Virus record (IMG/VR): IMGVR_UViG_3300027708_000012
Location: 281,370 to 345,369 of that record
Length of the DNA: 64,000 nt
Strand: one strand, 5' to 3'
The stretch's first letter is position 1; every line of letters starts with the position of its first letter. The notes under the pieces were generated by a model. That model saw only the letters and a list, made by a program, of their open reading frames with translations. It was not told the origin of the DNA and searched no databases. The translations under genes were made by a program, and so were the position numbers. This document shows positions 19,106 through 50,840 of this stretch, piece after piece.

Positions 19106-19117
19106 TGTGTTCTCTTT

Positions 19118-19142
19118 AAAAAAGGGGGAGTTGCCTCCCCCG
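19118..19142 (-). terminator. Terminator after hsp20
   Basis: GGGGGAG-GCAA-CTCCCCC-TTTTT on minus strand. Confidence 0.75.
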
Positions 19143-19147
19143 GTTGA

Positions 19148-19579
19148 TTATTTAACTGTAATGATACGTGGCTTCAGTGATTCTGGTACAATACGTTCAA
19201 TCCTAATGATTAACATACCGTCCTTTACTTCAGCGTCTTTGATTTCCATGTACTCAGCAAGAGTCCATGTCTGTTCAAAGTTACGGCTAGCAAGACCTCG
19301 ATGTAAATACTCTTTGTCTTCTGCTGAAATATCAGTTTGCATACCGCGAACAACTAATTGATCTTGGTCTACTTCAACTGTAATTTGATCTTTGCTGAAA
19401 CCTGCTACAGCTACTTCAATTGCATAATCTGTGTCACTATATTTTACAATATTATGTGGCGGATAATTATTTGATTGTTGCTGTAATCTTTGATTAAAGA
19501 TTTGATCAAATCCAACTAAAGCTCTACTTAGTTGTGCAAAGTCCGCTGGACTCACTGTTTTTAATTGCATTGTTGCCAT
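19148..19579 (-). CDS. Small heat-shock protein Hsp20/IbpA
   Basis: YPPHNI, IEVAVAGF, YLHRGLASRNF, DGMLII, VPE motifs. Confidence 0.95.
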   Translation of the reverse strand: MATMQLKTVSPADFAQLSRALVGFDQIFNQRLQQQSNNYPPHNIVKYSDTDYAIEVAVAGFSKDQITVEVDQDQLVVRGMQTDISAEDKEYLHRGLASRNFEQTWTLAEYMEIKDAEVKDGMLIIRIERIVPESLKPRIITVK

Positions 19580-19584
19580 TTTTT

Positions 19585-19635
19585 ATCTCCTTATATTAAG
19601 CAAGAATGTATGGGGCCCCATAATGGGCACCCCAT
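19585..19635 (-). promoter_or_regulatory. ROSE-like RNA thermometer in hsp20 leader
   Basis: UCUUGCU-UAAUAUA-AGGAGA hairpin with bulged G opposite the SD, preceded by GC-rich hairpin. Confidence 0.7.
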
Positions 19636-19647
19636 GTTTGTATTATA

Positions 19648-21555
19648 TTACTTTTTGTCAGTAGGGTCAACCTCTGTGAAAGCCGCATTAACTGACTGGC
19701 CTTCTTCAGGTTGTACTGGTGCTGATTGCGCTGCACTTTCTGCAGCTTGCTTCTTGGCCATAACTGGACCTGCTGCCTCAAAAAATGTTTCAACTGATTT
19801 TTGAATAACATCTTTGTCGTCCCCTGCGCAAGCAGTTTCTACTGCTTTAACAGCATCGTCAAACTTAGTCTTTTCTTCTTCAGTCAATTGATCTTTGTAT
19901 GTATCATAGTCTTTCTTGATACTGTGTGTAGTACCTTCAGCATTGTTACGTGCTGTGATTAATTCTGCTTGTTTCTTATCTGCTTCGGCATTTTCCTCAG
20001 CTTCTTGAACCATGCGTTTGATCTCAGCTTCTGTCAATCCGCTATCTGACTTGATAGTGATTTTGTTTTCTTTGCCGGTCTTTTTATCCCTGGCACTTAC
20101 ATTTAAAATACCGTTTGCATCGATATCTAATGTAACTTCAATCTGTGGCATGCCACGTGGTGCAGGATCAATACCTTCCAAGTTAAACTCGCCAAGCGAT
20201 TTATTGTACTTGAATAAGTCACGTTCGCCCTGAGCAACCTTAATAGTTACTGCTGGCTGATTGTCATCTGCTGTACTAAATGTTTGGCTATGTTTGGTCG
20301 GGATAGTTGTGTTTTTAGCAATCAGCTTGGTAAACACACCGCCCATTGTTTCAATACCTAGTGTCAATGGAGTAACGTCCAACAACAATACGTCTGTCTT
20401 GTCGCCAGCTAGAACAGCGCCTTGTACTGCGGCACCAGCGGCAACTGCTTCGTCTGGGTTAACGTCTTTACGTGGAGCCTTACCAAACAGTTTCTCAACT
20501 GCTTCTTGTACTTTAGGCATACGTGTTTGACCACCAACTAGAATAACTTCGTCGATGTCTGCGGCGCTAACTTTAGCATCTGCCATAGCAACTTTACATG
20601 GCTCAATTGAACGCTGGATCAGTCCGTCTACCATTGCTTCAAACTTAGCACGGCTGATAGTTACATTCATGTGCTTAGGACCGTTTGCATCTGCTGTAAT
20701 GTAAGGCAAGTTAACACTTGTACTTGCGGCTGTAGATAATTCAATCTTGGCTTTTTCAGCAGACTCTTTCAAACGTTGTAATGCAAGAACGTCTTGCTTC
20801 AAATCAACTCCGTTGTCTTTCTTGAACTCGTCTACCAAATAGTCCATGATAGCTTGGTCAAAGTCTTCACCGCCTAGGAATGTATCGCCGTTTGTTGACA
20901 ATACTTCAATTTGCTTGTCGCCATCAATGTTAGCGATTTCAATGATTGAAATATCAAATGTACCACCACCCAAGTCATAGACTGCAATCTTGCGATCTTT
21001 CTTGTCTGCTTTGTCAACACCATAAGCCAATGCGGCCGCTGTCGGCTCGTTGATAATACGTAGAACTTCTAAGCCTGCAATACGTCCGGCATCTTTAGTA
21101 GCTTGACGCTGGCTATCGTTGAAGTAAGCTGGAACTGTAATAACAGCTTGGGTCACTGTTGTACCTAAATAGTCTTCAGCAGTTTTTTTCATTTTGCGAA
21201 GTACTTCAGCTGATACTTGCTGTGGTGCAAGTTTTTCGCCGTTTGCTTCGATCCAAGCATCACCGTTGTCTGCTTTAATAATGCTGTAGGGCATCAAGTC
21301 AATATCTTTTTGCACAGCAGCTTCGTCAAACTTGCGACCAATAAGGCGCTTGCTGGCGTAAATTGTATTTTTTGGGTTTGTGACTGCTTGTCGTTTTGCT
21401 GTTGCACCAACTAGGATTTCGTCCTTTGTATATGCAATGATTGATGGTGTTGTTCTTGCGCCTTCGCTATTTTCAATAACTTTTGCTACTCCATTTTCTA
21501 GGATAGCTACGCAACTGTTTGTTGTACCTAAATCGATACCGATGATTTTACTCAT
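19648..21555 (-). CDS. dnaK: Chaperone DnaK (Hsp70)
   Basis: [35 protein letters not shown]; full length 635 aa. Confidence 0.98.
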
Positions 21556-28655: not shown

Positions 28656-30290
28656 TTAACCTTTTGTTATTAATTTATTTACCTCGGGGAGATAAAGGTA
28701 TTTAATTCCTGATCTCCTCAAAGTGCTTAATGCATCATCAATTGTTTCTACTAAGGGTTCTCCTCCTAAATTAAAACTAGTATTAAATAAAATTGGAACA
28801 CCAGTTTGATTATTAAACTCAGTTATCAAATTATAAAAATGAAAATTTTGTTCAATATTAATTGTTTGTACTCGACACGTATTATCCACATGTACAATGC
28901 TTGGTATTTGATTTTTCTTATTTTCTAAAACATTCACAGCATACATCATAAATGGACTGTTAGACGTGTTACGCATATCAAACCATTCGTGTACATGCTC
29001 TTCTAATACAGTTCCGGCAAACGGCCTGTACCATTCTCTTCCTTTTACACGATTAACAATGTCTTTACCTTGTTGTACTCTAGGGTCGAACAAAATACTA
29101 CGATTGCCTAATGCACGAGGTCCAGCTTCTGAACCTCCTTGAAATATAGCTACTATATTTTCAGAAACTAATAGATTAACAATGTCCGAGTAACTAACTG
29201 TTTGCTCAGTTTCATTTGATTCTAATTTATAATTGTAACTAGGAGTTGGACCTAGACAAAAAGATAATTGTTTATTTGGAGTCGTATTATTAGTAGTACT
29301 ATAATAAGCCAGTTTAGCTATACCTATACTTTGCCCCCCATCGTGCGCAGGAGGGTCTATGAATACATTAACGTCTTTAGGAATGTGTTTTAAATATTCA
29401 TAATTAGCTACACAATTTAATGCATAGCCGCCTGATATTACTAAATTTTTAGAATTGGATAATTTAAGTGCGGTTAAAATTAAATCAGTGGCTACTGATT
29501 GAGTAGATTGCTGTACAGCATAACAAAGATTGGCCGCATCATATTGTTCTACTTCGTCAAGGAATGGCGCAGCATACATTGCTGTATTAGGCCTAAACAA
29601 CTGTTTGTTAGGTGTTTTTTTACCGTTAACAGTTACATATATTTGTGGAATAGTTTCATCGTTCTTTCCGTACGAACTTAATCCCATTGCCTTGCCGCAC
29701 TCTAAATTTGTATGCCCTAAAGCAATACTTAGTGCAGAGTATATACTGGCAATACCTTGCTCATTAGCAAAGACTTTTTCTTCGTGAAACTTAGTAAGTT
29801 GATTATAGTTATTTCCAAACTTTTTATATATAGATGTAAATGTTTTTGGAAATTTTGCTAGATATATGCTTTCAACTTCGTATCCGGCTTTGCCAGCTTG
29901 GTCTAATTCGATATATTTTCCAGCAGCATCTATAACTACACATACCGCTTGGTCAAAACCAGAACTATAAAATCCACTGGTTGCATGATATAGATGATGC
30001 TCACCATTATTAAACACTTGCCTGTGATTGTCAATTAATCCAAGTTTTAAGGCAAATTTAATAAACGGGCCTGCTTCATTTGTAGTATCTGATGACCCTA
30101 CAGATATGGCTAGACAATCTACTTTATTCGTGTATTCAAGAACTTTAAGTAGTCCTAAGAATGGACTATCGTCGTATTTTTTTCGACTTAGTCTTTCTTC
30201 TTCTACATAAAAAACAATATTACCATTTTTAAGTAAACAAGTAGATGCGTTATGCCCTGTACTTATACCTACAATCCAGTTGTCACGCAT
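28656..30290 (-). CDS. Carbamoyltransferase (NodU/CmcH/TobZ family)
   Basis: EEERLSRKK, HHLYHA, GPRALGNRSIL, KGREWYRPFA, NTSFNLGGEP. Confidence 0.92.
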   Translation of the reverse strand: MRDNWIVGISTGHNASTCLLKNGNIVFYVEEERLSRKKYDDSPFLGLLKVLEYTNKVDCLAISVGSSDTTNEAGPFIKFALKLGLIDNHRQVFNNGEHHLYHATSGFYSSGFDQAVCVVIDAAGKYIELDQAGKAGYEVESIYLAKFPKTFTSIYKKFGNNYNQLTKFHEEKVFANEQGIASIYSALSIALGHTNLECGKAMGLSSYGKNDETIPQIYVTVNGKKTPNKQLFRPNTAMYAAPFLDEVEQYDAANLCYAVQQSTQSVATDLILTALKLSNSKNLVISGGYALNCVANYEYLKHIPKDVNVFIDPPAHDGGQSIGIAKLAYYSTTNNTTPNKQLSFCLGPTPSYNYKLESNETEQTVSYSDIVNLLVSENIVAIFQGGSEAGPRALGNRSILFDPRVQQGKDIVNRVKGREWYRPFAGTVLEEHVHEWFDMRNTSNSPFMMYAVNVLENKKNQIPSIVHVDNTCRVQTINIEQNFHFYNLITEFNNQTGVPILFNTSFNLGGEPLVETIDDALSTLRRSGIKYLYLPEVNKLITKG

Positions 30291-30303
30291 TTACTCGCTC
30301 ATA

Positions 30304-30615
30304 TTAATTTGGTACTGCTACGATTTTTCTAGTATTAGTTTGTGGATCGATCATTTCTTCCCAATGATATCCTAATGGCGGTGTTTGCACATAGGGTTGA
30401 GGTTGTTGTATAATTACAGGCGGTTGTTGAACAACAACTTGCTGATTGGCACGATTAATTTCGTAACCAATTACTCCACCAATAATTAACGGTGCAACCC
30501 AATTACCGCCACTGTAATAACCACCACCACGATAGTAACCACCATGATGGTGCCATTGTGCGTTAGCCGACCCTACTACTGCCAATAATGACAAAGCTAA
30601 AATTAACTTTTTCAT
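30304..30615 (-). CDS. Small exported Gly/Pro-rich protein
   Basis: Signal peptide; GGYY repeats; VVVQQPPV. Confidence 0.75.
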   Translation of the reverse strand: MKKLILALSLLAVVGSANAQWHHHGGYYRGGGYYSGGNWVAPLIIGGVIGYEINRANQQVVVQQPPVIIQQPQPYVQTPPLGYHWEEMIDPQTNTRKIVAVPN

Positions 30616-30671
30616 AATATACTCCTTTAAGCGTATACTAATATAACGCCTTAGGCTAATATTTAGTTGAC

Positions 30672-30866
30672 TTACTTTGGTTCTTTACGTGCGTTTTTAA
30701 CTGCGGTAACATCGTTACGAGTTTCTTTACACAATTTTGCCAAATCTTGGCAAGCCTTACGAACACGAGTGCCAGCTGCGCCGACTTCTTTATCATAAAA
30801 CTTTTCGAAGTCTGCTTCCATTGCTTCTACGATTGCTGTAAATTCTGCGTATTTGTTTTGAGCCAT
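30672..30866 (-). CDS. Hc1 (histone H1-like) N-terminal domain protein
   Basis: DFEKFYDKEVGAAGTRVRKACQDLAKLCKETR. Confidence 0.75.
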   Translation of the reverse strand: MAQNKYAEFTAIVEAMEADFEKFYDKEVGAAGTRVRKACQDLAKLCKETRNDVTAVKNARKEPK

Positions 30867-30936
30867 TTTAATAATCCTTTATATTAAGTACGAATACTTA
30901 TGCTGTAGTATACAGCAAATTAAAATAAATGTCTAG

Positions 30937-31242
30937 TTAATTGGCAAACACGTTGCCGGATCCGGATGTTATTGCGCCGCCGTCTGTTGAGTCGCCTACT
31001 CTGGCAACACCAACTCCTCCCACAAACACAGTTCCGGATCCGGCGTTAATTGCAGCCGCATGTTGCGCTGAACAATTACGGCCACCATATCTATGGGTAA
31101 CTGTAGGATTCCCTACACATTCAATAGGAATTCCATTTGCAAAAACTTTGGCGCCTGCACCGGTTGGTCCTGTGATAGTCGTGGTACCATCACAACCATG
31201 TCCGGTTGTTGTTGGGTCACCTTGTCTTGCTATAGCTGGCAT
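30937..31242 (-). CDS. PAAR-repeat spike tip protein (gp5.4-like)
   Basis: PAIARQGD, VFANGIP, GSGTVFVGG..VARVGD, GSGNVFAN. Confidence 0.9.
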   Translation of the reverse strand: MPAIARQGDPTTTGHGCDGTTTITGPTGAGAKVFANGIPIECVGNPTVTHRYGGRNCSAQHAAAINAGSGTVFVGGVGVARVGDSTDGGAITSGSGNVFAN

Positions 31243-31250
31243 ACAAATAT

Positions 31251-31541
31251 TTATGCTAGGGCAATTCCCGTAGTGGACTCAATAAATTGATCAGCAAATT
31301 GTTTGTCAGTTGGCTCTGCTACTGTTACTGTTGATTTTTGTAATTTAATTTCTTTATCAGGACTTACCGTAAACAAGTATGGCATTAGTCCTGGTCCTTT
31401 TGGGCCCATTCCGATAACCTGTGGATTTTTTAATTTATAATGTAACGGACCGTCTTCTACTAACTTGGCAACCAGCTCTTCGCCACTTGTTAGTTTGAGT
31501 GTAACTACTTCGCCTTCTGCGAAACCTTTTGAAATAAACAT
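31251..31541 (-). CDS. Small Sm-like fold phage protein
   Basis: VVTLKLTSGEELVAKL...TTGIALA. Confidence 0.7.
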   Translation of the reverse strand: MFISKGFAEGEVVTLKLTSGEELVAKLVEDGPLHYKLKNPQVIGMGPKGPGLMPYLFTVSPDKEIKLQKSTVTVAEPTDKQFADQFIESTTGIALA

Positions 31542-31542
31542 A

Positions 31543-31770
31543 TTATACCTTTTCGAAATGTTTTTTGAGTTCTGTAAACCCGCCAATGTAATTATCGTCT
31601 AAAAATATTTGTGGCACAGTCCTGGCATCAGGTACAGCTTCTAATAATTCTTCTTTAGTATAACCGTCGCCAATTTTACGTTCGTCAATTTGATAACCCT
31701 TAGCTTGCAATAGCTTATATGCTTGATCGCAGTAAGGGCAATGATATTTAGACCACATTGTTGCTTTCAT
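31543..31770 (-). CDS. Glutaredoxin
   Basis: CPYC, TVPQIF, IGGFTEL. Confidence 0.95.
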   Translation of the reverse strand: MKATMWSKYHCPYCDQAYKLLQAKGYQIDERKIGDGYTKEELLEAVPDARTVPQIFLDDNYIGGFTELKKHFEKV

Positions 31771-31779
31771 TCTATTTCC

Positions 31780-32880
31780 TTATAGTGCCGGTAATGCATC
31801 ATAATCCAACGTTTCGCTCATAATGCCAATAACATAATTAGTTGATTCGTTTTCTTGTAATGCTGTTTGTTTTTTACTTGTATCAGTATGTTTATTAAAC
31901 CATGGGATTGGAGTTGACTTTGGTGCAATTTGTTGATATTTAATACCAATGTCCTTTAATGCACCCACTGCTGTATAGTCTACAAAGTCTTTTAAGATAT
32001 TGGCATTTAAACCAATAACAGGACCTTTCTTAAACAAATAGTCTGCCCATTCTTTTTCTTCACGAATAACGTCCATATACATAGAATAGACTTCTTGTTC
32101 GCACTCTTGTTTGGCTTCAGCAAATCTACTATCTTCCTTGACCACTTGATTAATCAAATAGGCGGTCCAACCTTTGTGTAATAGTTCGTCTTGCAAGATC
32201 AAACTAATAATATTGCCGTTACCCATAAAGATTTTATTCTCTACCATTGCTAGACTTGTAGCAAAGCTAACCATAAAACGGAAGGCTTCTAGTGCGTAAC
32301 TGGCATTTAGTGCTAACCAGATAGCTCTAATATGTAATTTTTCACCAACATCTTCACCAAGCTCTTTATGACAATTAATTACGTGCAATTGGTCATAATA
32401 ATTGCCTACACTTGAGGCCATACTGATAATCTCTTGTGTGTCGTGGATAGTGTTGAATACATCCTTAGGAACATTGTAGATATTACGAATGATATGGCTA
32501 TAACTCTTTGAGTGAATGTTTGTTTCAAAGAATCCCCAGTTGTACATTAGTGCTTCTACTTCTGGCAAACTACAGACTGGAGTAAACACTTGTGTAGGGC
32601 CGCGACCTTGCAAACTGTCCAGTGCTGTTTGTCGTAGCAAGTTACTGGTAAAGATATGTTTGACAGCATCGCTGGCATCTTTAAAATCGTTAGCATCTTT
32701 GGTCAAACTAATTTCTTCTGGTTGCCAAAAGAAACCACGTGCTGTAGCTTCAAAGTCTGCAATCTTTTTATACTTGACTTCCTCAAATCTTTGAATGGTA
32801 ACAGGACCTGCTGGGTCTAAGAACATCTTGCGATTAAGATAGTCTGTCTTTGTTTTTAAATTATATTGTTCTTTACTCAT
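31780..32880 (-). CDS. nrdB: Ribonucleotide reductase class Ia beta subunit
   Basis: FFWQPEEI, LDSLQGRGP, ETNIHSKSY, LEAFRF, DELLH. Confidence 0.95.
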   Translation of the reverse strand: MSKEQYNLKTKTDYLNRKMFLDPAGPVTIQRFEEVKYKKIADFEATARGFFWQPEEISLTKDANDFKDASDAVKHIFTSNLLRQTALDSLQGRGPTQVFTPVCSLPEVEALMYNWGFFETNIHSKSYSHIIRNIYNVPKDVFNTIHDTQEIISMASSVGNYYDQLHVINCHKELGEDVGEKLHIRAIWLALNASYALEAFRFMVSFATSLAMVENKIFMGNGNIISLILQDELLHKGWTAYLINQVVKEDSRFAEAKQECEQEVYSMYMDVIREEKEWADYLFKKGPVIGLNANILKDFVDYTAVGALKDIGIKYQQIAPKSTPIPWFNKHTDTSKKQTALQENESTNYVIGIMSETLDYDALPAL

Positions 32881-35198
32881 AGCTTACATGCCTCGCAATC
32901 TTCTTCGTTGTCAAAATCAATAGCTTCTAACATGGTAGGTGCTTCTTCGGCATCTGCTTTACTACCTTGTTTGTTAATCAAACTATAGTAGAATGTTTTC
33001 AATCCCCACACCTGTGCCTGCATTAAATTTTTAGCAATCAATGTAGTTGGCACTTTACGACCTTCAAAGTGCGCTGGGTTATAGAATGTATTAGTACTAA
33101 TTGATTGATCAACATAGGCGGCGAGAACAGAAGCTGTTTTCAAATACCCGTCGCAATCTTTCTGATCCCACATCAACTGATACTTATTTTTAAGTTTATG
33201 GTATTCAGGAACAACTTGTATAAATGATCCTGCTTTTGATTCTTTAACACTGATCAAACTCATGGGCAACTCAATTCCATTAGTGCTGTTTATAACAACA
33301 CTACTGCTTTCGACTGGGGCGATGGCCATTAGTGTAGCATTGCGTACTCCGTACTGTTTCATATTAGTACGTAGCGTTTCCCAATCAAGTTCTGGGGCAA
33401 AGTTTGCTAGTTCATTAACACCTTCTGCTCGTAATTCCCAAGGGAATATGCCTTGACCGTATCGTGTGTGTGAGCTATGCTGACAAGGACCACGCTCTCG
33501 GGCCAAATCAACTGTTGCTTCTGTCAAGTAATAGGCTTGATGCTCCATCCAACTCTTAACATCCTGTAGTGCATCTTTCTCACCATACTTAAATCCACGT
33601 TTGGCGTGCCAGTAGGCTAGATTAGTAACACCAATACCCAGTGGACTAATTTCGTCGTTACTTAATTTGCTCTGGATTGAAAGAAAATCTTGATAATCTA
33701 AAATATTGCACAGGCTACGCTGTAAGATACGGCAAGCTCGGCGCATGTCTTCTGGATTACGGAAGGCTCCCCAGTTGATTGATCCTAGTGTACATAACGC
33801 TATGCGGCCTTCAGCGTCATCCAGACGTTTGAAAGATTTTGTAGGTAATAGGATTTCACAACACAAATTGCTTTGGTAGATAGTGTGATACTCTGGGTCA
33901 AACGGACCCTGGTTCATTACATTGTCAATGAACACTAGATAGATACGTCCTGTATCAGTACGCTCTTTCAATATGCCCGACTTGAATACTTCTTCAGCGG
34001 ACATAGTTTTTGTACGCAGGTCTTTGCGTTTTTCATATTTTACATATAGCTCTTCAAATAGTGCTGTGTTACTATAAAAAGCTTCGTACAAGTCAGGTAC
34101 TTCGTTAGGATCAAAGAATGTTATAGTCTCTTTGTTCTTAAATCGTCTCCAGAAAAATTTAGATAACACAACTCCGTAGTCCATGTGTCTAACTCGAGTT
34201 TCCTCTGTGCCTTGGTTGTTTTTAAGAACAATAAGGTCATCAAACTGATGATGCCAGATTGGATAGAACACAGTAGCACTAGCATTACGAATACCACCTT
34301 GACTACAACTACGCAAGTCACCGAACCATTTCTTTAAGAAAGGGATCATACCAGTATGCATGATTTCGCCACCGCGAATTGGGGAGCCCAATGGGCGAAG
34401 TCGACCGATTTCCAATCCAATCCCCGCACGTTTACTGGCATACTTTGCCATCATTTCACCACTAGCAAATATACTATCGAGGTCATCATCGCTACGTATG
34501 AGAACACAAGAACTAAACTGCTTAGTAGGAGTGCCAAGTCCGGCCAGCACAGGAGTAGCAAGAGTAAACAAACCATCAGAAGCCGCATTGTAATACTCCT
34601 TTATATAACGCATCCTTGCGCTGTTTGGTTCTTCACGATGAAAGACAGTAGCGGCCGCAACCATATATCTAATCTGTGGAGTTTCATAAGTTTCTTTTGT
34701 AGCACGATTACGTACTAGATATTTTTCAATTAGTTGTTCAATAGCTGCGTAACTGTATTGCTCGTCCTTTTCGTGATCGAGCATTGCATCCATTTTGTTC
34801 CAGTCTTCTTCGCTATACCACTCTAGCAGTTCTTTAGAGTACAGACCAATTTTAACATTTTTTTGTACAATAGAAAAAAGGCTTGGAGGTTTGTATGAAC
34901 CGTAAACATCTTTACGCAACATTGACAAACGCTGTTTACCTGCAACATATTGATAGTTTGTATGTCCAATATCAGGATTTGATTCTACGTCTATCAAATC
35001 AACAACAGCACGTAATGTAATCTCGTCAATTTCTTTTGTTGTGATACCATCGTAAAAGTGCGGCTGACTTTTGATCTCAATCATACTCTGACTGACGTCA
35101 GCTATTCCCTTGCATACTTTGGCAATTTGAGCTTGCCATTTTTCTACAGCTAGCAACTCTGTAGTTCCATTTCTTTTTATTACCGTTATGTTGTTCAT
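32877..35198 (-). CDS. nrdA: Ribonucleotide reductase class Ia alpha subunit
   Basis: ATP cone, QFSSCVLI, SNLCCEI, LCTLG, C-terminal CEACKL. Confidence 0.97.
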   Translation of the reverse strand: MNNITVIKRNGTTELLAVEKWQAQIAKVCKGIADVSQSMIEIKSQPHFYDGITTKEIDEITLRAVVDLIDVESNPDIGHTNYQYVAGKQRLSMLRKDVYGSYKPPSLFSIVQKNVKIGLYSKELLEWYSEEDWNKMDAMLDHEKDEQYSYAAIEQLIEKYLVRNRATKETYETPQIRYMVAAATVFHREEPNSARMRYIKEYYNAASDGLFTLATPVLAGLGTPTKQFSSCVLIRSDDDLDSIFASGEMMAKYASKRAGIGLEIGRLRPLGSPIRGGEIMHTGMIPFLKKWFGDLRSCSQGGIRNASATVFYPIWHHQFDDLIVLKNNQGTEETRVRHMDYGVVLSKFFWRRFKNKETITFFDPNEVPDLYEAFYSNTALFEELYVKYEKRKDLRTKTMSAEEVFKSGILKERTDTGRIYLVFIDNVMNQGPFDPEYHTIYQSNLCCEILLPTKSFKRLDDAEGRIALCTLGSINWGAFRNPEDMRRACRILQRSLCNILDYQDFLSIQSKLSNDEISPLGIGVTNLAYWHAKRGFKYGEKDALQDVKSWMEHQAYYLTEATVDLARERGPCQHSSHTRYGQGIFPWELRAEGVNELANFAPELDWETLRTNMKQYGVRNATLMAIAPVESSSVVINSTNGIELPMSLISVKESKAGSFIQVVPEYHKLKNKYQLMWDQKDCDGYLKTASVLAAYVDQSISTNTFYNPAHFEGRKVPTTLIAKNLMQAQVWGLKTFYYSLINKQGSKADAEEAPTMLEAIDFDNEEDCEACKL

Positions 35199-43197: not shown

Positions 43198-44742
43198 TTA
43201 AGCCCCTGAGTATCCGCCGTGGTATGGATTGTACAAATACTTGTTAGGCGCACCTAATAGTGCTGTACTATTGCTCCATGCATTAGTACTATTATTTGGA
43301 TTATACACTTGACTAGTTTTAGCCTGTGTTGTAATCCAAGTTTTAACTTGTGTAGGTGTTGCTGTGGGGTTGCCTTGCAAGTATAAAGCAGCTACGCCAG
43401 TAACTTGCGGAGTTGCCATACTAGTACCGGCAATTTTGCAAGCCTTGAATGTTGTTTGTTGTTGTGTGCCAAACACATACTGGAATGGACTAAAACTACT
43501 TTGATTGCTAGTACTACTTGTAATGTCAGTGCCTGGACTGATAATATTGCAACCTGGACCGCGCTCGCTGTAGTAGGCCAGTTGCTCTAAGTAACTACTT
43601 CCATTTTTAACAGTTGCACTATCGCTAGCACTTACACGGATTGTACCACTAGGACTTCCGCCTCTATGATAATATATAGGAGTGTTGGCTGGAGCAATAG
43701 CACCTGAAAAACTATGTGTATAATAGTTGTTGTAATCTGCGCCACCACTCACATCAATTTTATGACCATAGTTGCCAGCTGCTGCTATGTAGACAATACC
43801 AGCTGTTTGACCTTGAGCAATGCGTGTTTCAGTTGCTGGATCGCTAATGCAATGTTCAAACCCTACCATTCCTTTGCTGGGCAAATACTGTGTACCGCTA
43901 GCGTAATTGGTAGTTGTGCCTTCATAAACAATCTTATTGATAGTTTTTTGATTTGGACGATTTGCATTATCGCTGTAATACCAAACATATCCCCAACTCA
44001 TGTTAACAATAGTTGGACGATGATTGCCTGTGGCTATTTTTCTTAAATGCCAAGCACGGAGAATATCAAATGCTGCATAAGTATCAAAACTCTTAGTACC
44101 ACCTGGTGAATTGTCAAATATGCGCAGACTATAGATGTAAGCACCTTTTGCGGCACCGTAGGTTGTGCCAGCGGCTATGCCAGCCACATGTGTACCATGT
44201 TCGCCTTCACCGTAATTGCTGTAATCATAGTAACCAACTGGCATAGTGCCCGATAGTCCAGCTTCTGTGTACCAATTGATTTCTTTTAGTCTTGAACCAA
44301 ACTCTGGATGTCCTGATTGCACACCATCATCCATGATAACAATGTCAACACCAGTACCGTCACGAGAGGCTGCATAAGTTGTGCCCACTGTGCTTTCAGT
44401 AGTGTTAAGTGTTGCTCGGCGCAAGCCCCAATTTACATTATACAAGTCTGGATTAGTAGCACGACGGGAAAAATTGCCAGCTGTGTTATTATAAGCACGG
44501 GGAGTTTCTGTTACATCTGATACAGTATGTGGACGAGCAGCACTGGCAGGTAATTTATAGTGTATGTGTGCCACACGAGGATCAGTTGCTAGTTTGGCAG
44601 CTTCCTCGTCGGTCAACATGTAATGGTAAGTAAGTTCGTTTAAAGGAACTAGATCTGCAATTTCAGTGCCATTGGCCACTAGTTCAGCATGCAAACTATC
44701 TATATCTGCTTCGCTATGTGCGACAATGACACATTCTTTCAT
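43198..44742 (-). CDS. Subtilisin-like S8 serine protease
   Basis: IMDDG, HGTHVAG, AAAGN, GTSMATPQV; N-terminal propeptide-like region. Confidence 0.92.
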   Translation of the reverse strand: MKECVIVAHSEADIDSLHAELVANGTEIADLVPLNELTYHYMLTDEEAAKLATDPRVAHIHYKLPASAARPHTVSDVTETPRAYNNTAGNFSRRATNPDLYNVNWGLRRATLNTTESTVGTTYAASRDGTGVDIVIMDDGVQSGHPEFGSRLKEINWYTEAGLSGTMPVGYYDYSNYGEGEHGTHVAGIAAGTTYGAAKGAYIYSLRIFDNSPGGTKSFDTYAAFDILRAWHLRKIATGNHRPTIVNMSWGYVWYYSDNANRPNQKTINKIVYEGTTTNYASGTQYLPSKGMVGFEHCISDPATETRIAQGQTAGIVYIAAAGNYGHKIDVSGGADYNNYYTHSFSGAIAPANTPIYYHRGGSPSGTIRVSASDSATVKNGSSYLEQLAYYSERGPGCNIISPGTDITSSTSNQSSFSPFQYVFGTQQQTTFKACKIAGTSMATPQVTGVAALYLQGNPTATPTQVKTWITTQAKTSQVYNPNNSTNAWSNSTALLGAPNKYLYNPYHGGYSGA

Positions 44743-45744: not shown

Positions 45745-46629
45745 TTAAAAAGTTAAACCAAAACTAGGGTTTAGTCGCCATATGTATAGGCTGCTAGTAG
45801 AAAGTTCATTGTCTGTTAATACTTTTGCCACAGCTTGTACAAAGTTATACGGATAGTTACAGCTTTGAATTCTGCCGTCGCCGCAATAGCATAATGAATC
45901 TCCAGCTACACCCGAAAAGTCAACATCACCAAAGAATCCGTTACCTTCTGGAAGGAATGGTTCAGCATCATCTGCTACGGCAAATGTAAAACAGTCATAA
46001 CCAAGATCAACATACACATAACCGATTGAGGTACCGCCATCATACACTGTGGTAGTAGCTGTGCTGTTAAACTTCACATAAGTTGTTGTACATTCTGTAA
46101 CAAAGTGTTGGTCATAAAGATTGCAATTGTAACCATTTCCAACATCGGCCACACGCACTGGATCACCAACATTGAATGGCGGCGTTGGTTGTTCTACAAA
46201 TTCTAGTTTGGCAATGGTGCCGTCGCCTGTAGCTCTAGAAACATATATATTCTCACTAAAATATGTTGGCTTAAAAGCATACCAAGGACTTGCTTGATTC
46301 AATGGGCTGGTTGCTGAGTTTTGTGGTTCGCCCACATAGAACAATTCTGCTCCTCCGCCACCGCCTCCGCGGATATCGCCGTTGCCTTCTGTAGGAGCAT
46401 CAATACCCCCTATCATACCACCTTGCTGAATAGCACGAACCATTTGATAGTACAAACTGTTGCTGTCTTGCCAGTTAGCGGCAAGGCCGTAGTCTTGTTC
46501 TATATGTAAACTGTAAAATGCTAGTTTTCTTGTACCGAAGTTTGAACTTGCGGCTGTTCTGCGGTAGTTAAGGGCGGTTATGTTGTTACTGCTACCTTGT
46601 GTGATTTGATCACCTGCATATTTTGGCAT
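45745..46629 (-). CDS. Paralog 4 of tandem FGTR family, with inserted beta domain
   Basis: Start MPKYAG at 46629; LNYRR..SNFGTRKLAF...MVRAIQ...AELFYVG. Confidence 0.8.
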   Translation of the reverse strand: MPKYAGDQITQGSSNNITALNYRRTAASSNFGTRKLAFYSLHIEQDYGLAANWQDSNSLYYQMVRAIQQGGMIGGIDAPTEGNGDIRGGGGGGAELFYVGEPQNSATSPLNQASPWYAFKPTYFSENIYVSRATGDGTIAKLEFVEQPTPPFNVGDPVRVADVGNGYNCNLYDQHFVTECTTTYVKFNSTATTTVYDGGTSIGYVYVDLGYDCFTFAVADDAEPFLPEGNGFFGDVDFSGVAGDSLCYCGDGRIQSCNYPYNFVQAVAKVLTDNELSTSSLYIWRLNPSFGLTF

Positions 46630-46718
46630 TAATTTCTCCCGAATGCGTTTCAAGTATTTATGTGTTCCAGTCAACAAAAAAGGATCCTCAGATCCTTTAG
46701 TGTTCAGTCCCGTAAGGA

Positions 46719-48663: not shown

Positions 48664-48921
48664 TTATATTTGATTCTTAGATTCTTGAATACGTTTGATT
48701 CCACGTTTAAACTTATTGATATCATTGGCTTTAATACTGTTGATAAAACGGCGTTCAAGTTCTGCGGCTGTTTCAATATCGTAGTTTTCACGTATCATGT
48801 CTAATAAGTTAATAGCACTTTGTATAATATTGGAACCACGGCTTTCGATGACAAGTTCAGTGTCCCGACTAAGTCCAATATCGTTTAATTCTTGTAATAT
48901 ACTACGGGTGCTTTTACGCAT
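48664..48921 (-). CDS. Conserved phage hypothetical protein
   Basis: MRKSTRSILQEL...IESRGSNIIQSAINL...ELERRFINSIK. Confidence 0.75.
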   Translation of the reverse strand: MRKSTRSILQELNDIGLSRDTELVIESRGSNIIQSAINLLDMIRENYDIETAAELERRFINSIKANDINKFKRGIKRIQESKNQI

Positions 48922-48984: not shown

Positions 48985-49013
48985 TTGATAAATGTTGCGG
49001 TGCAATGTATAAT
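48985..49013 (+). promoter_or_regulatory. sigma70 promoter with palindromic TTGC-N3-GCAA (PhaR-like) operator in the spacer
   Basis: TTGATA-aatgTTGCggtGCAAtg-TATAAT. Confidence 0.6.
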
Positions 49014-49083
49014 GACATAAATACTCAGTAGAAACACTGATAACGTTTTTACTGATTTACACACACCAAAGGAAAAACACAAA

Positions 49084-49239
49084 ATGTTAAAATCTATCAA
49101 AACGCTCTTACAAAGAGTATTACATCAACCAACAGGCATCGAAGCCTTTATCGCAAGTAAAAATCCTCAAAATTGTGCAGATGTTGAGCATTGGATGCGA
49201 GTATACACTCAACGCAATGGAGGTCAATATGGCTTCTAA
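49084..49239 (+). CDS. Small protein, DUF3563-like (51 aa)
   Basis: MLKSIKTLLQRV...IEAFIASKNPQNCADVEHWMRVY; AAAGGA RBS. Confidence 0.65.
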   Translation: MLKSIKTLLQRVLHQPTGIEAFIASKNPQNCADVEHWMRVYTQRNGGQYGF

Positions 49240-49330
49240 ATTCAAACAATTTTTAAACAATATGATTGATGCTTGGATTGAAGCACGTCGTATGCAAGCC
49301 GATGCTTATATTAAAAGCAGGGGGCTATAA
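49229..49330 (+). CDS. Micro-protein (33 aa)
   Basis: MASKFKQFLNNMIDAWIEARRMQADAYIKSRGL*; GGAGG RBS. Confidence 0.65.
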   Translation: MASKFKQFLNNMIDAWIEARRMQADAYIKSRGL

Positions 49331-49431
49331 TGAAAGAGTTTGCTAAAAAATGGGAAGAACGCGAGTACGGCCCTAAACTGGCAATGGCTGCTATTACAGC
49401 TATGATCGTTTATTTGGTAGTAGCACAATGA
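49330..49431 (+). CDS. Micro membrane protein (33 aa)
   Basis: MKEFAKKWEEREYGPKLAMAAITAMIVYLVVAQ*; TAATG overlap. Confidence 0.6.
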   Translation: MKEFAKKWEEREYGPKLAMAAITAMIVYLVVAQ

Positions 49432-49505
49432 CCTACTGGTGGCCCGTAAGTGACGAGGAATGGGAACGTCTAAATTTTCCAGAAAAATTCCAGGAAAACA
49501 AATGA
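49428..49505 (+). CDS. Micro-protein (25 aa)
   Basis: MTYWWPVSDEEWERLNFPEKFQENK*; ATGA overlap. Confidence 0.55.
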   Translation: MTYWWPVSDEEWERLNFPEKFQENK

Positions 49506-49603
49506 ACTTCATTGACACACTATTAATGTTGCTGCGTTGGAAACAAGATGGCTGGGATGTACATCCTATAAATCTTGACTCTGAGTTTAGCGGCTGGTTC
49601 TAA
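49502..49603 (+). CDS. Micro-protein (33 aa)
   Basis: MNFIDTLLMLLRWKQDGWDVHPINLDSEFSGWF*; ATGA overlap, AGGA RBS. Confidence 0.6.
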   Translation: MNFIDTLLMLLRWKQDGWDVHPINLDSEFSGWF

Positions 49604-49618
49604 CCAATAAATACTGGC

Positions 49619-50194
49619 ATGAAACTAGTGTATATACACGGCGCCAATGCCACCAGCGAAAGCTTCAACTATATCAAGAGTAAACTTGGTACGGGAATAG
49701 ACATTGACTACGACAGCCGCAATGGGTTTGAAAACAACCTAAAAGACATGCAGGCTGTGTTGCAAGATCATAAAGATCTAGTATTCGTTGCACACAGTTT
49801 GGGCGGTATATACGCATTGCATTTGGCCAATACTATGCCAGCCGCAATTAAGGGTGCTGTAACATTAAGCACTCCGTATGGTGGCGCTGAAGTAGCAGAT
49901 TATGCTCAATACTTTTTGCCATTCAGCAGACTGATGCGTGACATTGGTCCTAGCTCGTGGGTAATGAAGCAGGCGAGCCGTATCAAGATACAGCATCCGT
50001 GGACTAACATTGTTACTGTGAAAGGGCAAAGTCCTTTTATGCATGAGCCCAACGATGGTGTGGTGACCATTGCCAGTCAAAAGCATCATGCAGATATGGA
50101 ATTAGTAGAAGTGGATTGTAATCACTATGAAGTTGTGCTCAGTGACGTGGTTGTTAAACTTATTAAAGAAAGAGTAAACAAGTTTAAGAAATAA
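49619..50194 (+). CDS. Alpha/beta hydrolase (lipase/esterase)
   Basis: YIHGAN, AHSLGG nucleophile elbow, NDGVV, NH. Confidence 0.9.
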   Translation: MKLVYIHGANATSESFNYIKSKLGTGIDIDYDSRNGFENNLKDMQAVLQDHKDLVFVAHSLGGIYALHLANTMPAAIKGAVTLSTPYGGAEVADYAQYFLPFSRLMRDIGPSSWVMKQASRIKIQHPWTNIVTVKGQSPFMHEPNDGVVTIASQKHHADMELVEVDCNHYEVVLSDVVVKLIKERVNKFKK

Positions 50195-50290
50195 GTCATT
50201 CAGCTTTACACACAGTTTTGTATACTGTATAATAAATACATAGACAGCAATAATGCTGTTATACACAAACATACACACAAGGAGAAAAAT

Positions 50291-50506
50291 ATGTTTACAT
50301 TTGAATCAATCATCGACACCGTTACAGGTGCTCAAACTAGGTTTGTAGAAACTTATGTTACAGACAAGAAAGTTAAAGCTGAAGTTACTAAGCTAATTGA
50401 AGCACAAGCCGCTTTCACAAAAACCACCTATACTAACACATTGGAACTTGCTCAATCAGCAGTTAAGAATTTCAACGAATTAGTTTACTCTAAGAAAGGT
50501 GCTTAA
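50291..50506 (+). CDS. Small amphipathic helical protein, phasin-like
   Basis: IIDTVTGAQTRFVETYV...LIEAQAAFTK; AAGGAG RBS; promoter TTTACA-17-TATAAT at 50205-50233. Confidence 0.55.
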   Translation: MFTFESIIDTVTGAQTRFVETYVTDKKVKAEVTKLIEAQAAFTKTTYTNTLELAQSAVKNFNELVYSKKGA

Positions 50507-50507
50507 T

Positions 50508-50774
50508 ATGTCATTCGAAACACCAAAACTACCAGAAGTTAAATTCAGCAAGAACGGCTACGAAATCCGCACAGACGTGTTGTCCATGGCTAAAGATGCT
50601 GTTATGGAAGAATACCATAGCAAGTTCAAGGGCTGGGAAATGTCAGTTGCTCGTGATGAGAAGACTGGACAAGTTGTAACCCGAGTAGATATGCCAGAGT
50701 TTCCAGGTCTAGACAAGATCATGGAAGCCGCTGAAAAGTTCTATGGTTTCGTCAATACCGGAACCAAGAAATAA
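50508..50774 (+). CDS. Conserved phage hypothetical protein
   Basis: KNGYEIRTDVLSMAK...FPGLDKIMEAAEKFYGFV. Confidence 0.75.
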   Translation: MSFETPKLPEVKFSKNGYEIRTDVLSMAKDAVMEEYHSKFKGWEMSVARDEKTGQVVTRVDMPEFPGLDKIMEAAEKFYGFVNTGTKK

Positions 50775-50810: not shown

Positions 50811-50840
50811 CAAAAAGGACCTTAAAGGTCCTTTTTCTTT
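50811..50840. terminator. Bidirectional terminator between convergent genes
   Basis: AAAAAGGACC-TTAAA-GGTCCTTTTT. Confidence 0.8.

What the first reader, a model, noticed from the sequence alone, without database searches (positions are those of the whole stretch)
49084..49603. Chain of five translationally coupled micro-ORFs invisible to the ORF track
Seen: 51, 33, 33, 25 and 33 aa ORFs, each start overlapping the previous stop (TAATG or ATGA) or ORF end, three with clear SD; Trp-rich short motifs. The gapless tiling argues they are real. Inference: early host-takeover or anti-defence peptides.
Basis: seen in the sequence. Interest (0 to 1): 0.65.

Follow-up and report, generated by a model that had tools for sequence, protein, structure and literature searches.

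The report
Five real coupled phage micro-genes
The five tiny overlapping reading frames are genuine, evolutionarily conserved genes for 25 to 51-residue proteins in an uncultured 345-kb phage. They belong to a shuffling kit of micro-proteins that many uncultured phages share; one 20-residue member is too short for gene finders, and what they do is still unknown.

Summary
ORFs at 49084-49239, 49229-49330, 49330-49431, 49428-49505 and 49502-49603 (+) tile without gaps. No other 600-nt stretch of the 345-kb genome, and none of 3000 shuffles, holds a chain of four or more.

All five are real genes. Each belongs to a peptide family that recurs in related IMG/VR phage contigs. Pooled dN/dS in the annotated frame is 0.15-0.50, against about 0.9-1.8 in shifted frames. 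The stop/start overlaps are kept across relatives.

- ORF4 (25 aa) belongs to a roughly 20-aa family with core WWPV[ST]DEEWE.LN[YF]P. It occurs in at least 120 viral contigs, usually overlapping the stop of a phage small heat-shock gene.
- ORF1, ORF2 and ORF4 relatives occur in the same order behind such a gene in a 168-kb contig.
- Natural fusions (E+D, TM peptide+E, P91+E) link the members.

The "early host-takeover / anti-defence" reading is not supported. Nearly all relatives carry a T4-type late promoter motif (ATAAATAC) upstream, and the island sits among virion genes. The window also has a near-consensus sigma-70 promoter.

No Pfam, PHROG, NCBIfam, PDB or fold match gives a function. 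My best guess is late-made, stoichiometrically coupled, partly membrane-anchored binding peptides. No RNA evidence could be obtained.

The parts
48664..48921 (-). Divergent neighbour: 85-aa virion structural protein gene. It is the left anchor of the cassette in relatives.
   Evidence: phrog_11854 'virion structural protein', E 2e-15. The synteny vsp(-)|gap|hydrolase(+) is kept in 75 of the 80 fetched relatives.
48985..49013 (+). Sigma-70-like promoter TTGATA-17-TATAAT (11 of 12), with the palindrome TTGCggtGCAA in its spacer.
   Evidence: Comparable hexamers scoring 10 of 12 or better occur in about a third of the 42 distinct relatives. A palindromic GC-rich spacer block is visible in many relatives.
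49017..49024 (+). T4-type late-promoter motif ATAAATAC.
   Evidence: [CA]TAAATA[CAT] lies at the same place in nearly all of the 42 distinct relatives. ATAAATA is the most enriched upstream 7-mer in the genome: 37 of 149 upstream regions against 1.5 expected. It stands before large and virion genes. A gp55-like ORF is present in the genome.
49025..49054 (+). Conserved leader block TCAGTAGAAAC and inverted repeat (49026-49035 / 49045-49054) at the predicted 5' end of the transcript.
   Evidence: The block AGTAGAAAC is nearly invariant across relatives. RNAalifold found no covarying consensus structure, so conservation is at sequence level.
49084..49239 (+). ORF1, 51 aa. Family A, a short subtype with motif LE.FI.SKNP....DVE.W.R.Y. 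Predicted three-helix protein.
   Evidence: Family A is present in every related cassette. dN/dS is 0.26 against 1.07 and 1.42 in shifted frames. There are 2756 clusters in the 5.8-billion protein set, all unnamed. AF2 gives pLDDT 79. SD is AAGGA.
49229..49330 (+). ORF2, 33 aa. Family B', a cationic amphipathic helix with motif K.F....I.AW.EAR.
   Evidence: B' dN/dS is 0.37. The window-type subset gives 0.50 against 0.87 and 1.02. hhalign to family B gives 92% probability over the N-terminal 21 columns. B' also follows sHSP genes in other phages. SD is GGAGGT.
49330..49431 (+). ORF3, 33 aa. Family C, a tail-anchored hydrophobic peptide ending ...IVYLV.AQ.
   Evidence: Four distinct peptides occur in 11 loci. 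dN/dS is 0.37 against 0.91 and 1.01. Both differences from L004 are synonymous. The maximal 15-residue hydropathy is 2.55. Unrelated TM peptides occupy the same slot in relatives.
49428..49505 (+). ORF4, 25 aa. Family D, an acidic Trp-rich micro-protein with core WWPV[ST]DEEWE.LN[YF]P.
   Evidence: The back-translated core is found in at least 120 IMG/VR contigs and only 2 MAG contigs in 596 Gb of prokaryote genomes. There are 85 distinct peptides of 18-33 aa, and the start overlaps or abuts the upstream stop in 105 of 118 loci. Flank codons outside the search pattern give pN 0.24 and pS 0.99. In loci anchored on sHSP, D follows the sHSP in 51 of 77.
49502..49603 (+). ORF5, 33 aa. Family E, with motif ..LLRW...GW[ED]VHP....EF.GW[FI].
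   Evidence: 17 distinct peptides. dN/dS is 0.15 against 1.10 and 1.70. Against L004, 10 of 12 changed codons are synonymous. 21 clusters are found among 1.84 billion representatives, nearly all 29-73 aa. Natural fusions to D, to a TM peptide and to P91 exist.
49619..50194 (+). 191-aa alpha/beta hydrolase (nucleophile elbow AHSLGG), last gene of the first transcription unit. It has no SD, and ATAAATA sits at 49607-49613, 5 nt before the ATG.
   Evidence: Pfam Abhydrolase_6, E 5e-7. Weak esterase/lipase PHROG hits. 223 relatives in IMG/VR at up to 100% identity. It is absent from some cassettes (L086-L088). SD scan.
50205..50259 (+). Second promoter region of the island: TTTACA-17-TATAAT overlapping ATAAATAC (50232-50239), then hairpin 50244-50259.
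   Evidence: It has the same dual architecture as the region in front of ORF1.
50291..50774 (+). P71 (50291-50506) and P91 (ATG at 50508, to 50774). These are conserved small proteins that travel with the micro-genes in other phages.
   Evidence: Homologues flank A, B and D in many loci. A natural P91-E chimera exists (P0136). No family hit. The AF2 model of P91 is unreliable, pLDDT 55.
50812..50836 (.). Bidirectional hairpin terminator (AAAAAGGACC-TTAAA-GGTCCTTTTT). It closes the + strand island and the convergent 783-aa gene.
   Evidence: Read from the sequence. The simple terminator scan did not report it.

Best explanation
The five ORFs are bona fide protein-coding micro-genes. Together with an alpha/beta hydrolase, they form the first transcription unit of a small + strand island inside the late virion-gene block of an uncultured T4-like jumbo phage.

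Shown:
- Each ORF belongs to its own peptide family (A, B', C, D, E) that recurs in related phage contigs, evolves under purifying selection, and keeps stop/start overlap with its neighbour.
- The families behave as independent modules that are gained, lost, reordered and even fused.
- The core order A then B' then D also occurs directly behind phage small-heat-shock genes in other phages.

Inferred:
- The unit is transcribed mainly from a gp55-type late promoter (ATAAATAC). In this phage it is probably also transcribed from an overlapping sigma-70 promoter.
- It is translated by termination-reinitiation, so that the peptides are made in fixed proportions.

Most likely mode of action (inference, weakest step): the products act as short binding peptides rather than enzymes.
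- One is anchored in the membrane (ORF3, whose slot is filled by unrelated TM peptides in relatives).
- Two are helical (ORF1, ORF2).
- Two are Trp-rich acidic motif peptides (ORF4, ORF5) that dock on a common partner at or near the membrane late in infection.

The partner is unknown.
For: Coding status:
- Pooled dN/dS is 0.26 (A), 0.37 and 0.50 (B'), 0.37 (C) and 0.15 (E) in the annotated frame, against 0.87-1.8 in shifted frames.
- D flank codons give pN 0.24 and pS 0.99, against 0.32-0.37 and 0.26 when shifted.
- Window against L004: ORF3 has 2 of 2 and ORF5 has 10 of 12 changed codons synonymous.

Coupling:
- 57 junctions across the related cassettes, including every A-to-B junction outside the window's short-A subtype, are 4-nt ATGA overlaps.
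- The D start overlaps or abuts the upstream stop in 105 of 118 loci.
- The chain is unique in the genome and absent from shuffles.

Modularity:
- 41 distinct gap sequences hold 2-5 micro-genes.
- L211 has the order A-B'-X-B/E-D-hydrolase-P91.
- L273 has the order sHSP-A-B'-D.
- Fusions are E+D (P0140), TM+E (P0138, P0139) and P91+E (P0136).

Timing:
- The late motif is conserved in nearly all relatives, is enriched 25-fold upstream of genes, and sits mostly on a different gene set from the sigma-70 sites.
- A gp55 homologue is present, E 1.5e-6.
- The surrounding genes are virion and tail genes.

Membrane:
- ORF3 hydropathy is 2.55.
- Three unrelated TM peptide types occupy the same slot.
- An A-family member has an N-terminal hydrophobic segment (L124).

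Not a leader peptide: in sHSP contexts D is followed by a hairpin terminator plus a new promoter.
Against: - There is no direct evidence of transcription or translation.
- ORF4 differs from its closest relative L004 by four changes, all non-synonymous. ORF3 and ORF4 have no good SD.
- The D family was first retrieved with a pattern that fixes its core, so core conservation in that set is circular. Only the flanks and the sHSP-anchored set are unbiased.
- Codon alignments were built from protein alignments, which slightly favours the annotated frame.
- The late-promoter assignment is by analogy with T4 and by enrichment, not by mapped 5' ends.
- Complex prediction of ORF1 with ORF2 gave no verdict.
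- No structural or profile hit supports any specific partner or the membrane-complex idea.
- The hydrolase is missing from some cassettes, so a joint function with it is not obligatory.
Confidence: 0.6

Rival explanations
1. Early host-takeover or anti-defence peptides. Host RNA polymerase transcribes the cassette at the start of infection, and the peptides disable host functions or defence systems.
For: - The window has a near-consensus sigma-70 promoter 70 nt upstream of ORF1. About a third of relatives have a site scoring 10 of 12 or better.
- The phage uses many perfect sigma-70 promoters elsewhere: 66 against about 19 expected.
- The modules show presence/absence polymorphism typical of accessory loci.
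Against: - The element conserved in nearly all relatives is the late-type motif, not the sigma-70 hexamers.
- The island lies among virion genes, far from the dense early-promoter arrays at 0-8 kb and 148-320 kb.
- Families A and B are core genes under purifying selection, not diversifying.
- There is no similarity to any known counter-defence protein.
Confidence: 0.15
2. Regulatory leader or arrest peptides. The act of translating the micro-ORFs, not their products, sets expression of the downstream hydrolase, as with TnaC, SecM or uORFs.
For: - The hydrolase has no SD and starts 15 nt after the ORF5 stop, so its translation probably depends on upstream ribosomes.
- ORF4 has the conserved Trp/Pro pattern and the length typical of arrest peptides.
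Against: - The same families occur without any hydrolase (L086-L088; sHSP contexts).
- D is most often the last gene of its operon, followed by a terminator hairpin and a new promoter.
- Five different conserved peptides are more than a leader needs.
- Fusions between modules argue for functional polypeptides.
Confidence: 0.08
3. A lysis or envelope module. The small membrane and amphipathic peptides act as holin-, antiholin- or disruptin-like factors together with the esterase, to breach the host envelope at the end of infection.
For: - Late-type promoter.
- A TM-peptide slot.
- Cationic amphipathic ORF2, net charge +3.
- An alpha/beta hydrolase with weak esterase/lipase hits follows directly.
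Against: - No muralytic enzyme is adjacent.
- The hydrolase is optional.
- Only one of the five peptides is hydrophobic, and D and E are acidic.
- The commonest partner of D is a cytosolic small heat-shock protein.
- There is no holin or spanin family hit.
Confidence: 0.12
4. Not genes: chance ORFs in a spacer, or fragments of one decayed larger gene.
For: - All are under 60 aa.
- Blastn finds almost no nucleotide conservation of the region in relatives whose hydrolase is 88-94% identical.
- ORF4 against L004 shows only non-synonymous changes.
Against: - Frame-specific purifying selection is seen in all five families.
- Each family occurs independently in other contexts and orders.
- The chain is unique against the genome and against shuffles.
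- Starts and stops are preserved across deep divergence.
Confidence: 0.03

Closest known systems
Runs of small overlapping genes of unknown function in T4-type phages (for example T4 a-gt.2 to a-gt.5 and 55.1 to 55.8, seen), and phage small proteins in general (review PMC11323111)
   Same: Tiled, co-oriented, often overlapping small genes in a T4-like genome. They are accessory and variable between relatives, and are mostly uncharacterised.
   Different: - These are much shorter (25-51 aa; family D is typically 18-25 aa).
- They sit behind a late-type promoter inside the virion block.
- The families have no PHROG, Pfam or NCBIfam model and no match in cultured phage genomes.
- The modules recombine at sub-gene level, giving natural fusions.
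Pfam DUF3563 (PF12086), roughly 60-aa bacterial proteins of unknown function
   Same: Similar size. A typical family-A member aligns over nearly the whole model and carries an LER-containing first helix. An ESM-Atlas look-alike cluster of ORF1 is labelled DUF3563.
   Different: The score is 15.5 bits against a cut-off of 26.9. Window ORF1 gets no hit and has LQRV in place of LERL. No relative of family A exists in 185,579 prokaryote species genomes. This is a lead, not membership.
Nascent-chain arrest or leader peptides (TnaC, SecM, MifM; from general knowledge)
   Same: Length of about 20-25 codons. The invariant residues are Trp and Pro. Translation is tied to a neighbouring gene.
   Different: D is coupled to the gene upstream of it and is usually followed by a terminator. 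It also occurs fused to other peptide modules. No stalling has been tested.
Small membrane proteins of phage lysis cassettes (holins, antiholins, spanins, disruptin; from general knowledge)
   Same: Late expression, a single TM segment (ORF3), and a gene for a hydrolytic enzyme next door.
   Different: No family match. The enzyme is an alpha/beta hydrolase, not a muralytic enzyme, and it is optional. Four of the five peptides are not membrane-spanning.

Membership tests
Protein-coding gene under selection (all five ORFs) | Excess of synonymous over non-synonymous change in the annotated frame only | tested here: met
   dN/dS is A 0.26, B' 0.37 and 0.50, C 0.37, E 0.15. Shifted frames give 0.87-1.8. 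D flanks give pN 0.24 and pS 0.99.
Protein-coding gene under selection (all five ORFs) | Direct evidence of transcription and translation | not testable with these tools
Translationally coupled operon | Stop/start overlap or abutment kept across relatives | tested here: met
   Window junctions are -11, -1, -4 and -4 nt. 57 junctions in the relatives are ATGA overlaps. D overlaps or abuts its upstream gene in 105 of 118 loci and in all 51 D-bearing sHSP-anchored loci.
T4-type late (gp55-dependent) transcription unit | TATAAATA-like motif at a fixed distance upstream, shared with virion genes | tested here: met
   ATAAATAC lies at 49017-49024. The motif is present in nearly all of the 42 distinct relatives, is enriched 25-fold upstream of genes, and stands before large and virion genes.
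T4-type late (gp55-dependent) transcription unit | Phage encodes a gp55-like late sigma factor | tested here: met
   T4 gp55 against the genome: E 1.5e-6, 31% identity over residues 23-115, in a 287-aa open frame. The match is weak but specific.
T4-type late (gp55-dependent) transcription unit | Transcripts start at the motif late in infection | not testable with these tools
   No RNA data could be obtained.
Pfam DUF3563 (ORF1 / family A) | Score at or above the gathering threshold of PF12086 (26.9 bits) | tested here: not met
   15.5 bits for a typical member. There is no hit for window ORF1 and none in the genome at E up to 10.
TPR-like helical hairpin (family B) | Score above the Pfam TPR thresholds | tested here: not met
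   Best hit is TPR_4 at 17.1 bits against a cut-off of 27. Window ORF2 (B') has no hit.
Holin / lysis cassette | TM small protein adjacent to a muralytic enzyme, with a family match to holins or spanins | tested here: not met
   ORF3 is hydrophobic. The neighbour is an alpha/beta hydrolase, and no holin or spanin PHROG or Pfam hit was found.
Leader / arrest peptide | Lies upstream of, and controls, the regulated gene through a structure in the spacer | tested here: not met
   In 50 distinct sHSP-type loci, D is followed by a terminator-like hairpin with a new -35/-10 (mean z -3.9). In the window it overlaps the ORF5 start with no spacer.
Known anti-defence proteins | Homology to a described counter-defence family | tested here: inconclusive
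   There are no hits in PHROGs, Pfam or NCBIfam. No dedicated anti-defence library was available, and such proteins are often orphans.

The most novel reading that the evidence does not exclude
The A-B'-D set, with C and E, is a mobile kit of micro-proteins that phages attach to their own chaperone system. The roughly 20-aa D peptide is made in one-to-one coupling with a phage small heat-shock protein in most genomes that carry it. It would bind that chaperone, or its DnaK/ClpS partners (this phage also encodes both), through its invariant WPV...DEEWE motif. For example, it could mimic the I-x-I tail that fits the alpha-crystallin groove, and so retune host proteostasis late in infection. That would make it one of the shortest conserved functional proteins known in viruses. 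It is invisible to standard gene callers.
Probability: 0.1. Interest if true: 0.8.

Novelty: new member of a known kind. Interest (0 to 1): 0.6.

Why it matters
Gene callers discard ORFs under about 30 codons, and annotators distrust those under 60. Here five such ORFs in a row prove to be conserved genes.

The locus gives a clean test bed for several questions:
- how very short proteins evolve (independent modules, non-homologous replacement in one slot, natural fusions);
- how translational coupling holds them in fixed proportions;
- what they add to phage chaperone genes and late functions.

It also shows that comparative tiling analysis can recover micro-genes that ORF tracks miss.

Tried and rejected
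- **Cultured phages.** Nucleotide and protein searches of GenBank phages with the region, a 310-aa neighbouring gene (window 45745-46677), ORF4 and P91 found nothing useful. Only a subtilisin-like protease elsewhere in the window matched, in T4-like cyanophages.
- **Family scans.** Pfam, PHROGs and NCBIfam on the five ORFs gave no hit. On typical relatives they gave only sub-threshold DUF3563, TPR-like and membrane-peptide hints.
- **Prokaryote genomes.** Family A has no relative in them.
- **Paralogues.** A search inside the genome found none.
- **Complex prediction, ORF1 with ORF2.** Score 0.02, no verdict. This is neither for nor against binding.
- **Structure of ORF1.** AF2 gives a three-helix model at pLDDT 79, but the atlas and PDB fold searches and the PDB profile search gave only chance-level rows.
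- **Structure of P91.** AF2 gave pLDDT 55, too poor to search.
- **ESM Atlas look-alikes.** ORF1 gave leads only (best 0.89, one DUF3563-labelled cluster). ORF5 gave nothing.
- **Rfam.** No hit on the island.
- **Leader RNA.** RNAalifold found no consensus structure.
- **Degenerate late-motif regex.** My first version was mis-specified and uninformative. It was replaced by an unbiased 7-mer enrichment.
- **Window against L004.** An ungapped comparison was mis-registered by an indel and was redone ORF by ORF.
- **Rejected: one frameshifted gene.** The five ORFs are in different frames, each has its own ATG, and each family occurs alone elsewhere.
- **Rejected: the antisense 70-aa ORF (49306-49518) as the real gene.** Substitutions fall on third positions of the + strand frames, and families C and D occur apart in other genomes.
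- **Not used.** The metagenome-contig scan was not run, because the viral collection gave enough.
Full report
**What the window is.** The window is the last 64 kb of a 345,369-bp IMG/VR virus record, estimated 94% complete. Most genes run on the - strand. From about 35 kb to the end of the window they are virion, tail-spike and tail-fibre-like genes. The finding lies in a short + strand island (49084-50774). On the left is a divergent 85-aa virion structural protein gene (48664-48921, phrog_11854). On the right is a convergent 783-aa gene.

**Check of the observation.** The five ORFs exist exactly as described.

| ORF | Coordinates | Length | Junction with previous ORF |
|---|---|---|---|
| ORF1 | 49084-49239 | 51 aa | first in chain |
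| ORF2 | 49229-49330 | 33 aa | 11-nt overlap |
| ORF3 | 49330-49431 | 33 aa | TAATG |
| ORF4 | 49428-49505 | 25 aa | ATGA |
| ORF5 | 49502-49603 | 33 aa | ATGA |

Three have a clear Shine-Dalgarno site: ORF1 AAGGA, ORF2 GGAGGT, ORF5 AGGA. ORF3 has only a G-run and ORF4 has none. ORF4 and ORF5 each hold three Trp. A chain of five tiled small ORFs occurs nowhere else in the genome, where the maximum is three. No chain of four or more appeared in 3000 shuffled windows.

**Relatives.** I used the downstream 191-aa alpha/beta hydrolase (49619-50194; Pfam Abhydrolase_6, E 5e-7) as an anchor.
- The search for related loci found 223 relatives in IMG/VR and fetched 80, at 88-100% amino-acid identity.
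- The synteny virion gene(-) | gap | hydrolase(+) is kept in 75 of them, with a gap of 426-697 nt. The window has the longest gap.
- Blastn finds almost none of the micro-ORF DNA in these relatives, apart from ORF5 in about half.
- Yet every gap holds its own tiled chain of 2-5 small ORFs, and these fall into recurrent peptide families.

The families are:
- **A**, about 58 aa. Window ORF1 is a short subtype.
- **B**, about 39 aa, or **B'**, 28-33 aa. Window ORF2 is B'. hhalign of B' against B gives 92% probability over the N-terminal 21 columns.
- **A slot for single-pass hydrophobic peptides**, with at least three unrelated types. Window ORF3 is type C.
- **D**, which includes window ORF4.
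- **E**, which includes window ORF5.

More distant relatives were reached through ORF1. One of them is a 340-kb contig. They carry A-B-TM-D with no hydrolase.

**Are they coding?** Pooled pairwise Nei-Gojobori estimates on distinct sequences are shown below.

| Family | dN/dS, annotated frame | dN/dS, shifted frames |
|---|---|---|
| A | 0.26 | 1.07, 1.42 |
| B | 0.34 | 0.99, 1.83 |
| B' | 0.37 | 0.92, 1.79 |
| B', window-type subset | 0.50 | 0.87, 1.02 |
| C | 0.37 | 0.91, 1.01 |
| E | 0.15 | 1.10, 1.70 |

Against the closest variant, L004:
- ORF3 has two differences, both synonymous.
- ORF5 has twelve changed codons, ten of them synonymous.
- ORF4 has four differences, all replacements. This is the one discordant datum.

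The exact peptides of ORF1, 2, 3 and 5 already sit in public gene-call sets. ORF4 does not.

**ORF4 and family D.** I back-translated the core of ORF4 into a degenerate DNA pattern.
- It hit only two contigs in 596 Gb of prokaryote genomes. Both are MAG contigs that look like phage.
- It hit nothing in cultured phages.
- In 118 loci the ORF is always tiny: 85 distinct peptides of 18-33 aa, mode 21. Its start overlaps or abuts the stop of the upstream gene in 105 of them.
- The pattern fixes the core, so I scored only the codons outside it. These give pN 0.24 and pS 0.99 in frame, against 0.32-0.37 and 0.26 when shifted.

In a second sample I anchored on the upstream partner rather than on D. 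There, 51 of 77 loci carry D overlapping the stop of an IbpA-like small heat-shock gene, with only Asp/Glu swaps in the core. Other loci carry B' or A in that place. One 168-kb contig reads sHSP, A, B', D. That is the order of window ORF1, ORF2 and ORF4. After D, these loci have a terminator-like hairpin whose loop holds a -35 box, followed by a -10 box (mean z -3.9 over 50 distinct spacers). So D ends an operon and does not lead one.

**Family E and natural fusions.** A profile of E was scored against 1.84 billion representative proteins. It found 21 clusters, nearly all of 29-73 aa. E is therefore a stand-alone micro-protein, not a domain of a known larger one. Among the hits are natural fusions:
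- the N-half of E joined to D (P0140);
- a C-slot TM peptide joined to the C-half of E (P0138, P0139);
- the N-part of P91 joined to the C-half of E (P0136).

These chimeras, and the constant company of P71 and P91 homologues, tie the modules together functionally.

**Regulation.**
- The window has a near-consensus sigma-70 promoter at 48985-49013.
- What is conserved in nearly all of the 42 distinct relatives is [CA]TAAATAC, followed by the leader block TCAGTAGAAAC, about 45-55 nt before the ATG of family A.
- ATAAATA is by far the most enriched 7-mer upstream of genes in this genome: 37 of 149 upstream regions against 1.5 expected.
- That motif stands before large and virion genes, and mostly on a different gene set from the sigma-70-like sites.
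- The sigma-70-like sites cluster at 0-8 kb and 148-320 kb of the genome.
- The genome encodes a homologue of the T4 late sigma gp55, E 1.5e-6.

I therefore read the motif as a T4-type late promoter. That is an inference. The same dual arrangement precedes P71. The hydrolase has no SD and has ATAAATA five bases before its ATG. A hairpin at 50812-50836 ends the island.

**Function.** Nothing in Pfam, PHROGs, NCBIfam, PDB sequences, fold libraries or Rfam identifies any of the five.
- The only lead is a sub-threshold likeness of family A to DUF3563, echoed by one Atlas cluster. It fails the family threshold. Family A has no relative in prokaryote genomes.
- ORF1 models as three helices at pLDDT 79.
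- ORF3 is a tail-anchored hydrophobic peptide.
- ORF2 is cationic and helical in character.
- ORF4 and ORF5 are acidic and Trp-rich.

The best-supported account is that these are late-made, translationally coupled micro-proteins acting as binding peptides. One is anchored in the membrane. The partner is not yet known. The recurrent link of A, B' and D with phage small heat-shock genes suggests proteostasis as one candidate. So does the presence of DnaK, sHSP and ClpS genes in this same window. The adjacent esterase-like hydrolase suggests the envelope as another.

**Comparison with what is known.** The kind is known: phage small proteins, often in tiled runs in T4-type genomes (review PMC11323111). 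The families are not. No library model, no cultured-phage match and no paper holding the motifs was found. A recently described lineage of aquatic jumbo phages with DnaK and HSP20 genes and Bacteroidota hosts (PMC12619734) may be related. I did not test that.

**Limits.**
- The complex prediction gave no verdict.
- Timing rests on motif analogy.
- I did not verify that these contigs come from freshwater. The only hint is the MAG names.

Noticed in passing
window 18803-21555 (- strand): A proteostasis cluster in the phage: DnaK (19648-21555, 635 aa), an IbpA-like small heat-shock protein (19148-19579; Pfam HSP20, 57.7 bits), and a ClpS-like 100-aa adaptor (18803-19105; ClpS by eye only, from its sequence motifs).
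   Followed up: partly
loci L089-L208 and L214-L293 (other IMG/VR phages): In other phages, of roughly T4 size (contigs up to 168 kb), the space between an sHSP gene and a 65-80-aa gene with motif YYTYSNW is a variable spot. It holds none, one, two or three of the micro-genes A, B' and D, and ends in a hairpin whose loop carries a -35 box followed by a -10 box.
   Followed up: partly
proteins P0136, P0138, P0139, P0140: Natural chimeras between the micro-protein modules: P91 N-part + E C-half, TM peptide + E C-half, and E N-half + D. The joins fall at the shared short motif GWE(VHP), which suggests recombination at sub-gene level.
   Followed up: partly
window 49604-49621: The hydrolase gene has no Shine-Dalgarno site and has AATAAATAC ending 5 nt before its ATG. 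This 15-nt stretch is conserved in relatives whatever micro-gene precedes it. It could mean reinitiation after the last micro-ORF, or a leaderless late transcript.
   Followed up: no
window 48991-49007 and the same place in relatives: A short GC-rich palindrome (TTGCggtGCAA here; TGCGgtCGCA in many relatives) sits in the spacer of the sigma-70-like promoter, just upstream of the late motif. It looks like an operator for an unknown regulator.
   Followed up: no
window 49025-49035 and relatives: The leader block TCAGTAGAAAC directly after the late motif is nearly invariant across relatives whose coding DNA has diverged beyond blastn detection. No covarying structure was found, so it may be a protein-binding or initial-transcript element.
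   Followed up: partly
genome G000 1-8 kb and 148-320 kb (outside and partly inside the window): There are 66 sigma-70-like sites of at least 11 of 12, against about 19 expected. Many are perfect TTGACA-17-TATAAT, with a dense + strand array in the first 8 kb before small genes. This looks like the early region.
   Followed up: partly
genome G000 about 105.2-105.5 kb (locus L213): A 287-aa ORF with a weak but specific match to T4 gp55 late sigma factor (E 1.5e-6). Together with TATAAATA-like motifs before virion genes, it points to T4-type late transcription in a 345-kb phage.
   Followed up: partly
window 48664-48921 against 49619-50194 in loci L002-L081: The 85-aa virion protein left of the cassette varies from 52 to 100% identity among relatives. 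The hydrolase stays at 88-100%. The two flanks of the cassette therefore have very different evolutionary rates or histories.
   Followed up: no
window 28656-35198 (- strand): Auxiliary metabolic genes just upstream of the virion block: a Nol-like carbamoyltransferase (28656-30290) and class Ia ribonucleotide reductase small and large subunits (31780-35198).
   Followed up: no
window 43198-44742 (- strand): A 514-aa subtilisin-like protease. Its only matches among cultured phages are T4-like cyanophages (25-31% identity), where it lies next to baseplate genes.
   Followed up: no
loci L210 and L211: The only two prokaryote-genome hits to the D motif are short MAG contigs labelled Polynucleobacter and Crocinitomicaceae. 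L211 carries a full A-B'-X-B/E-D-hydrolase-P91 cassette, so it is probably a phage contig binned with a possible host.
   Followed up: partly
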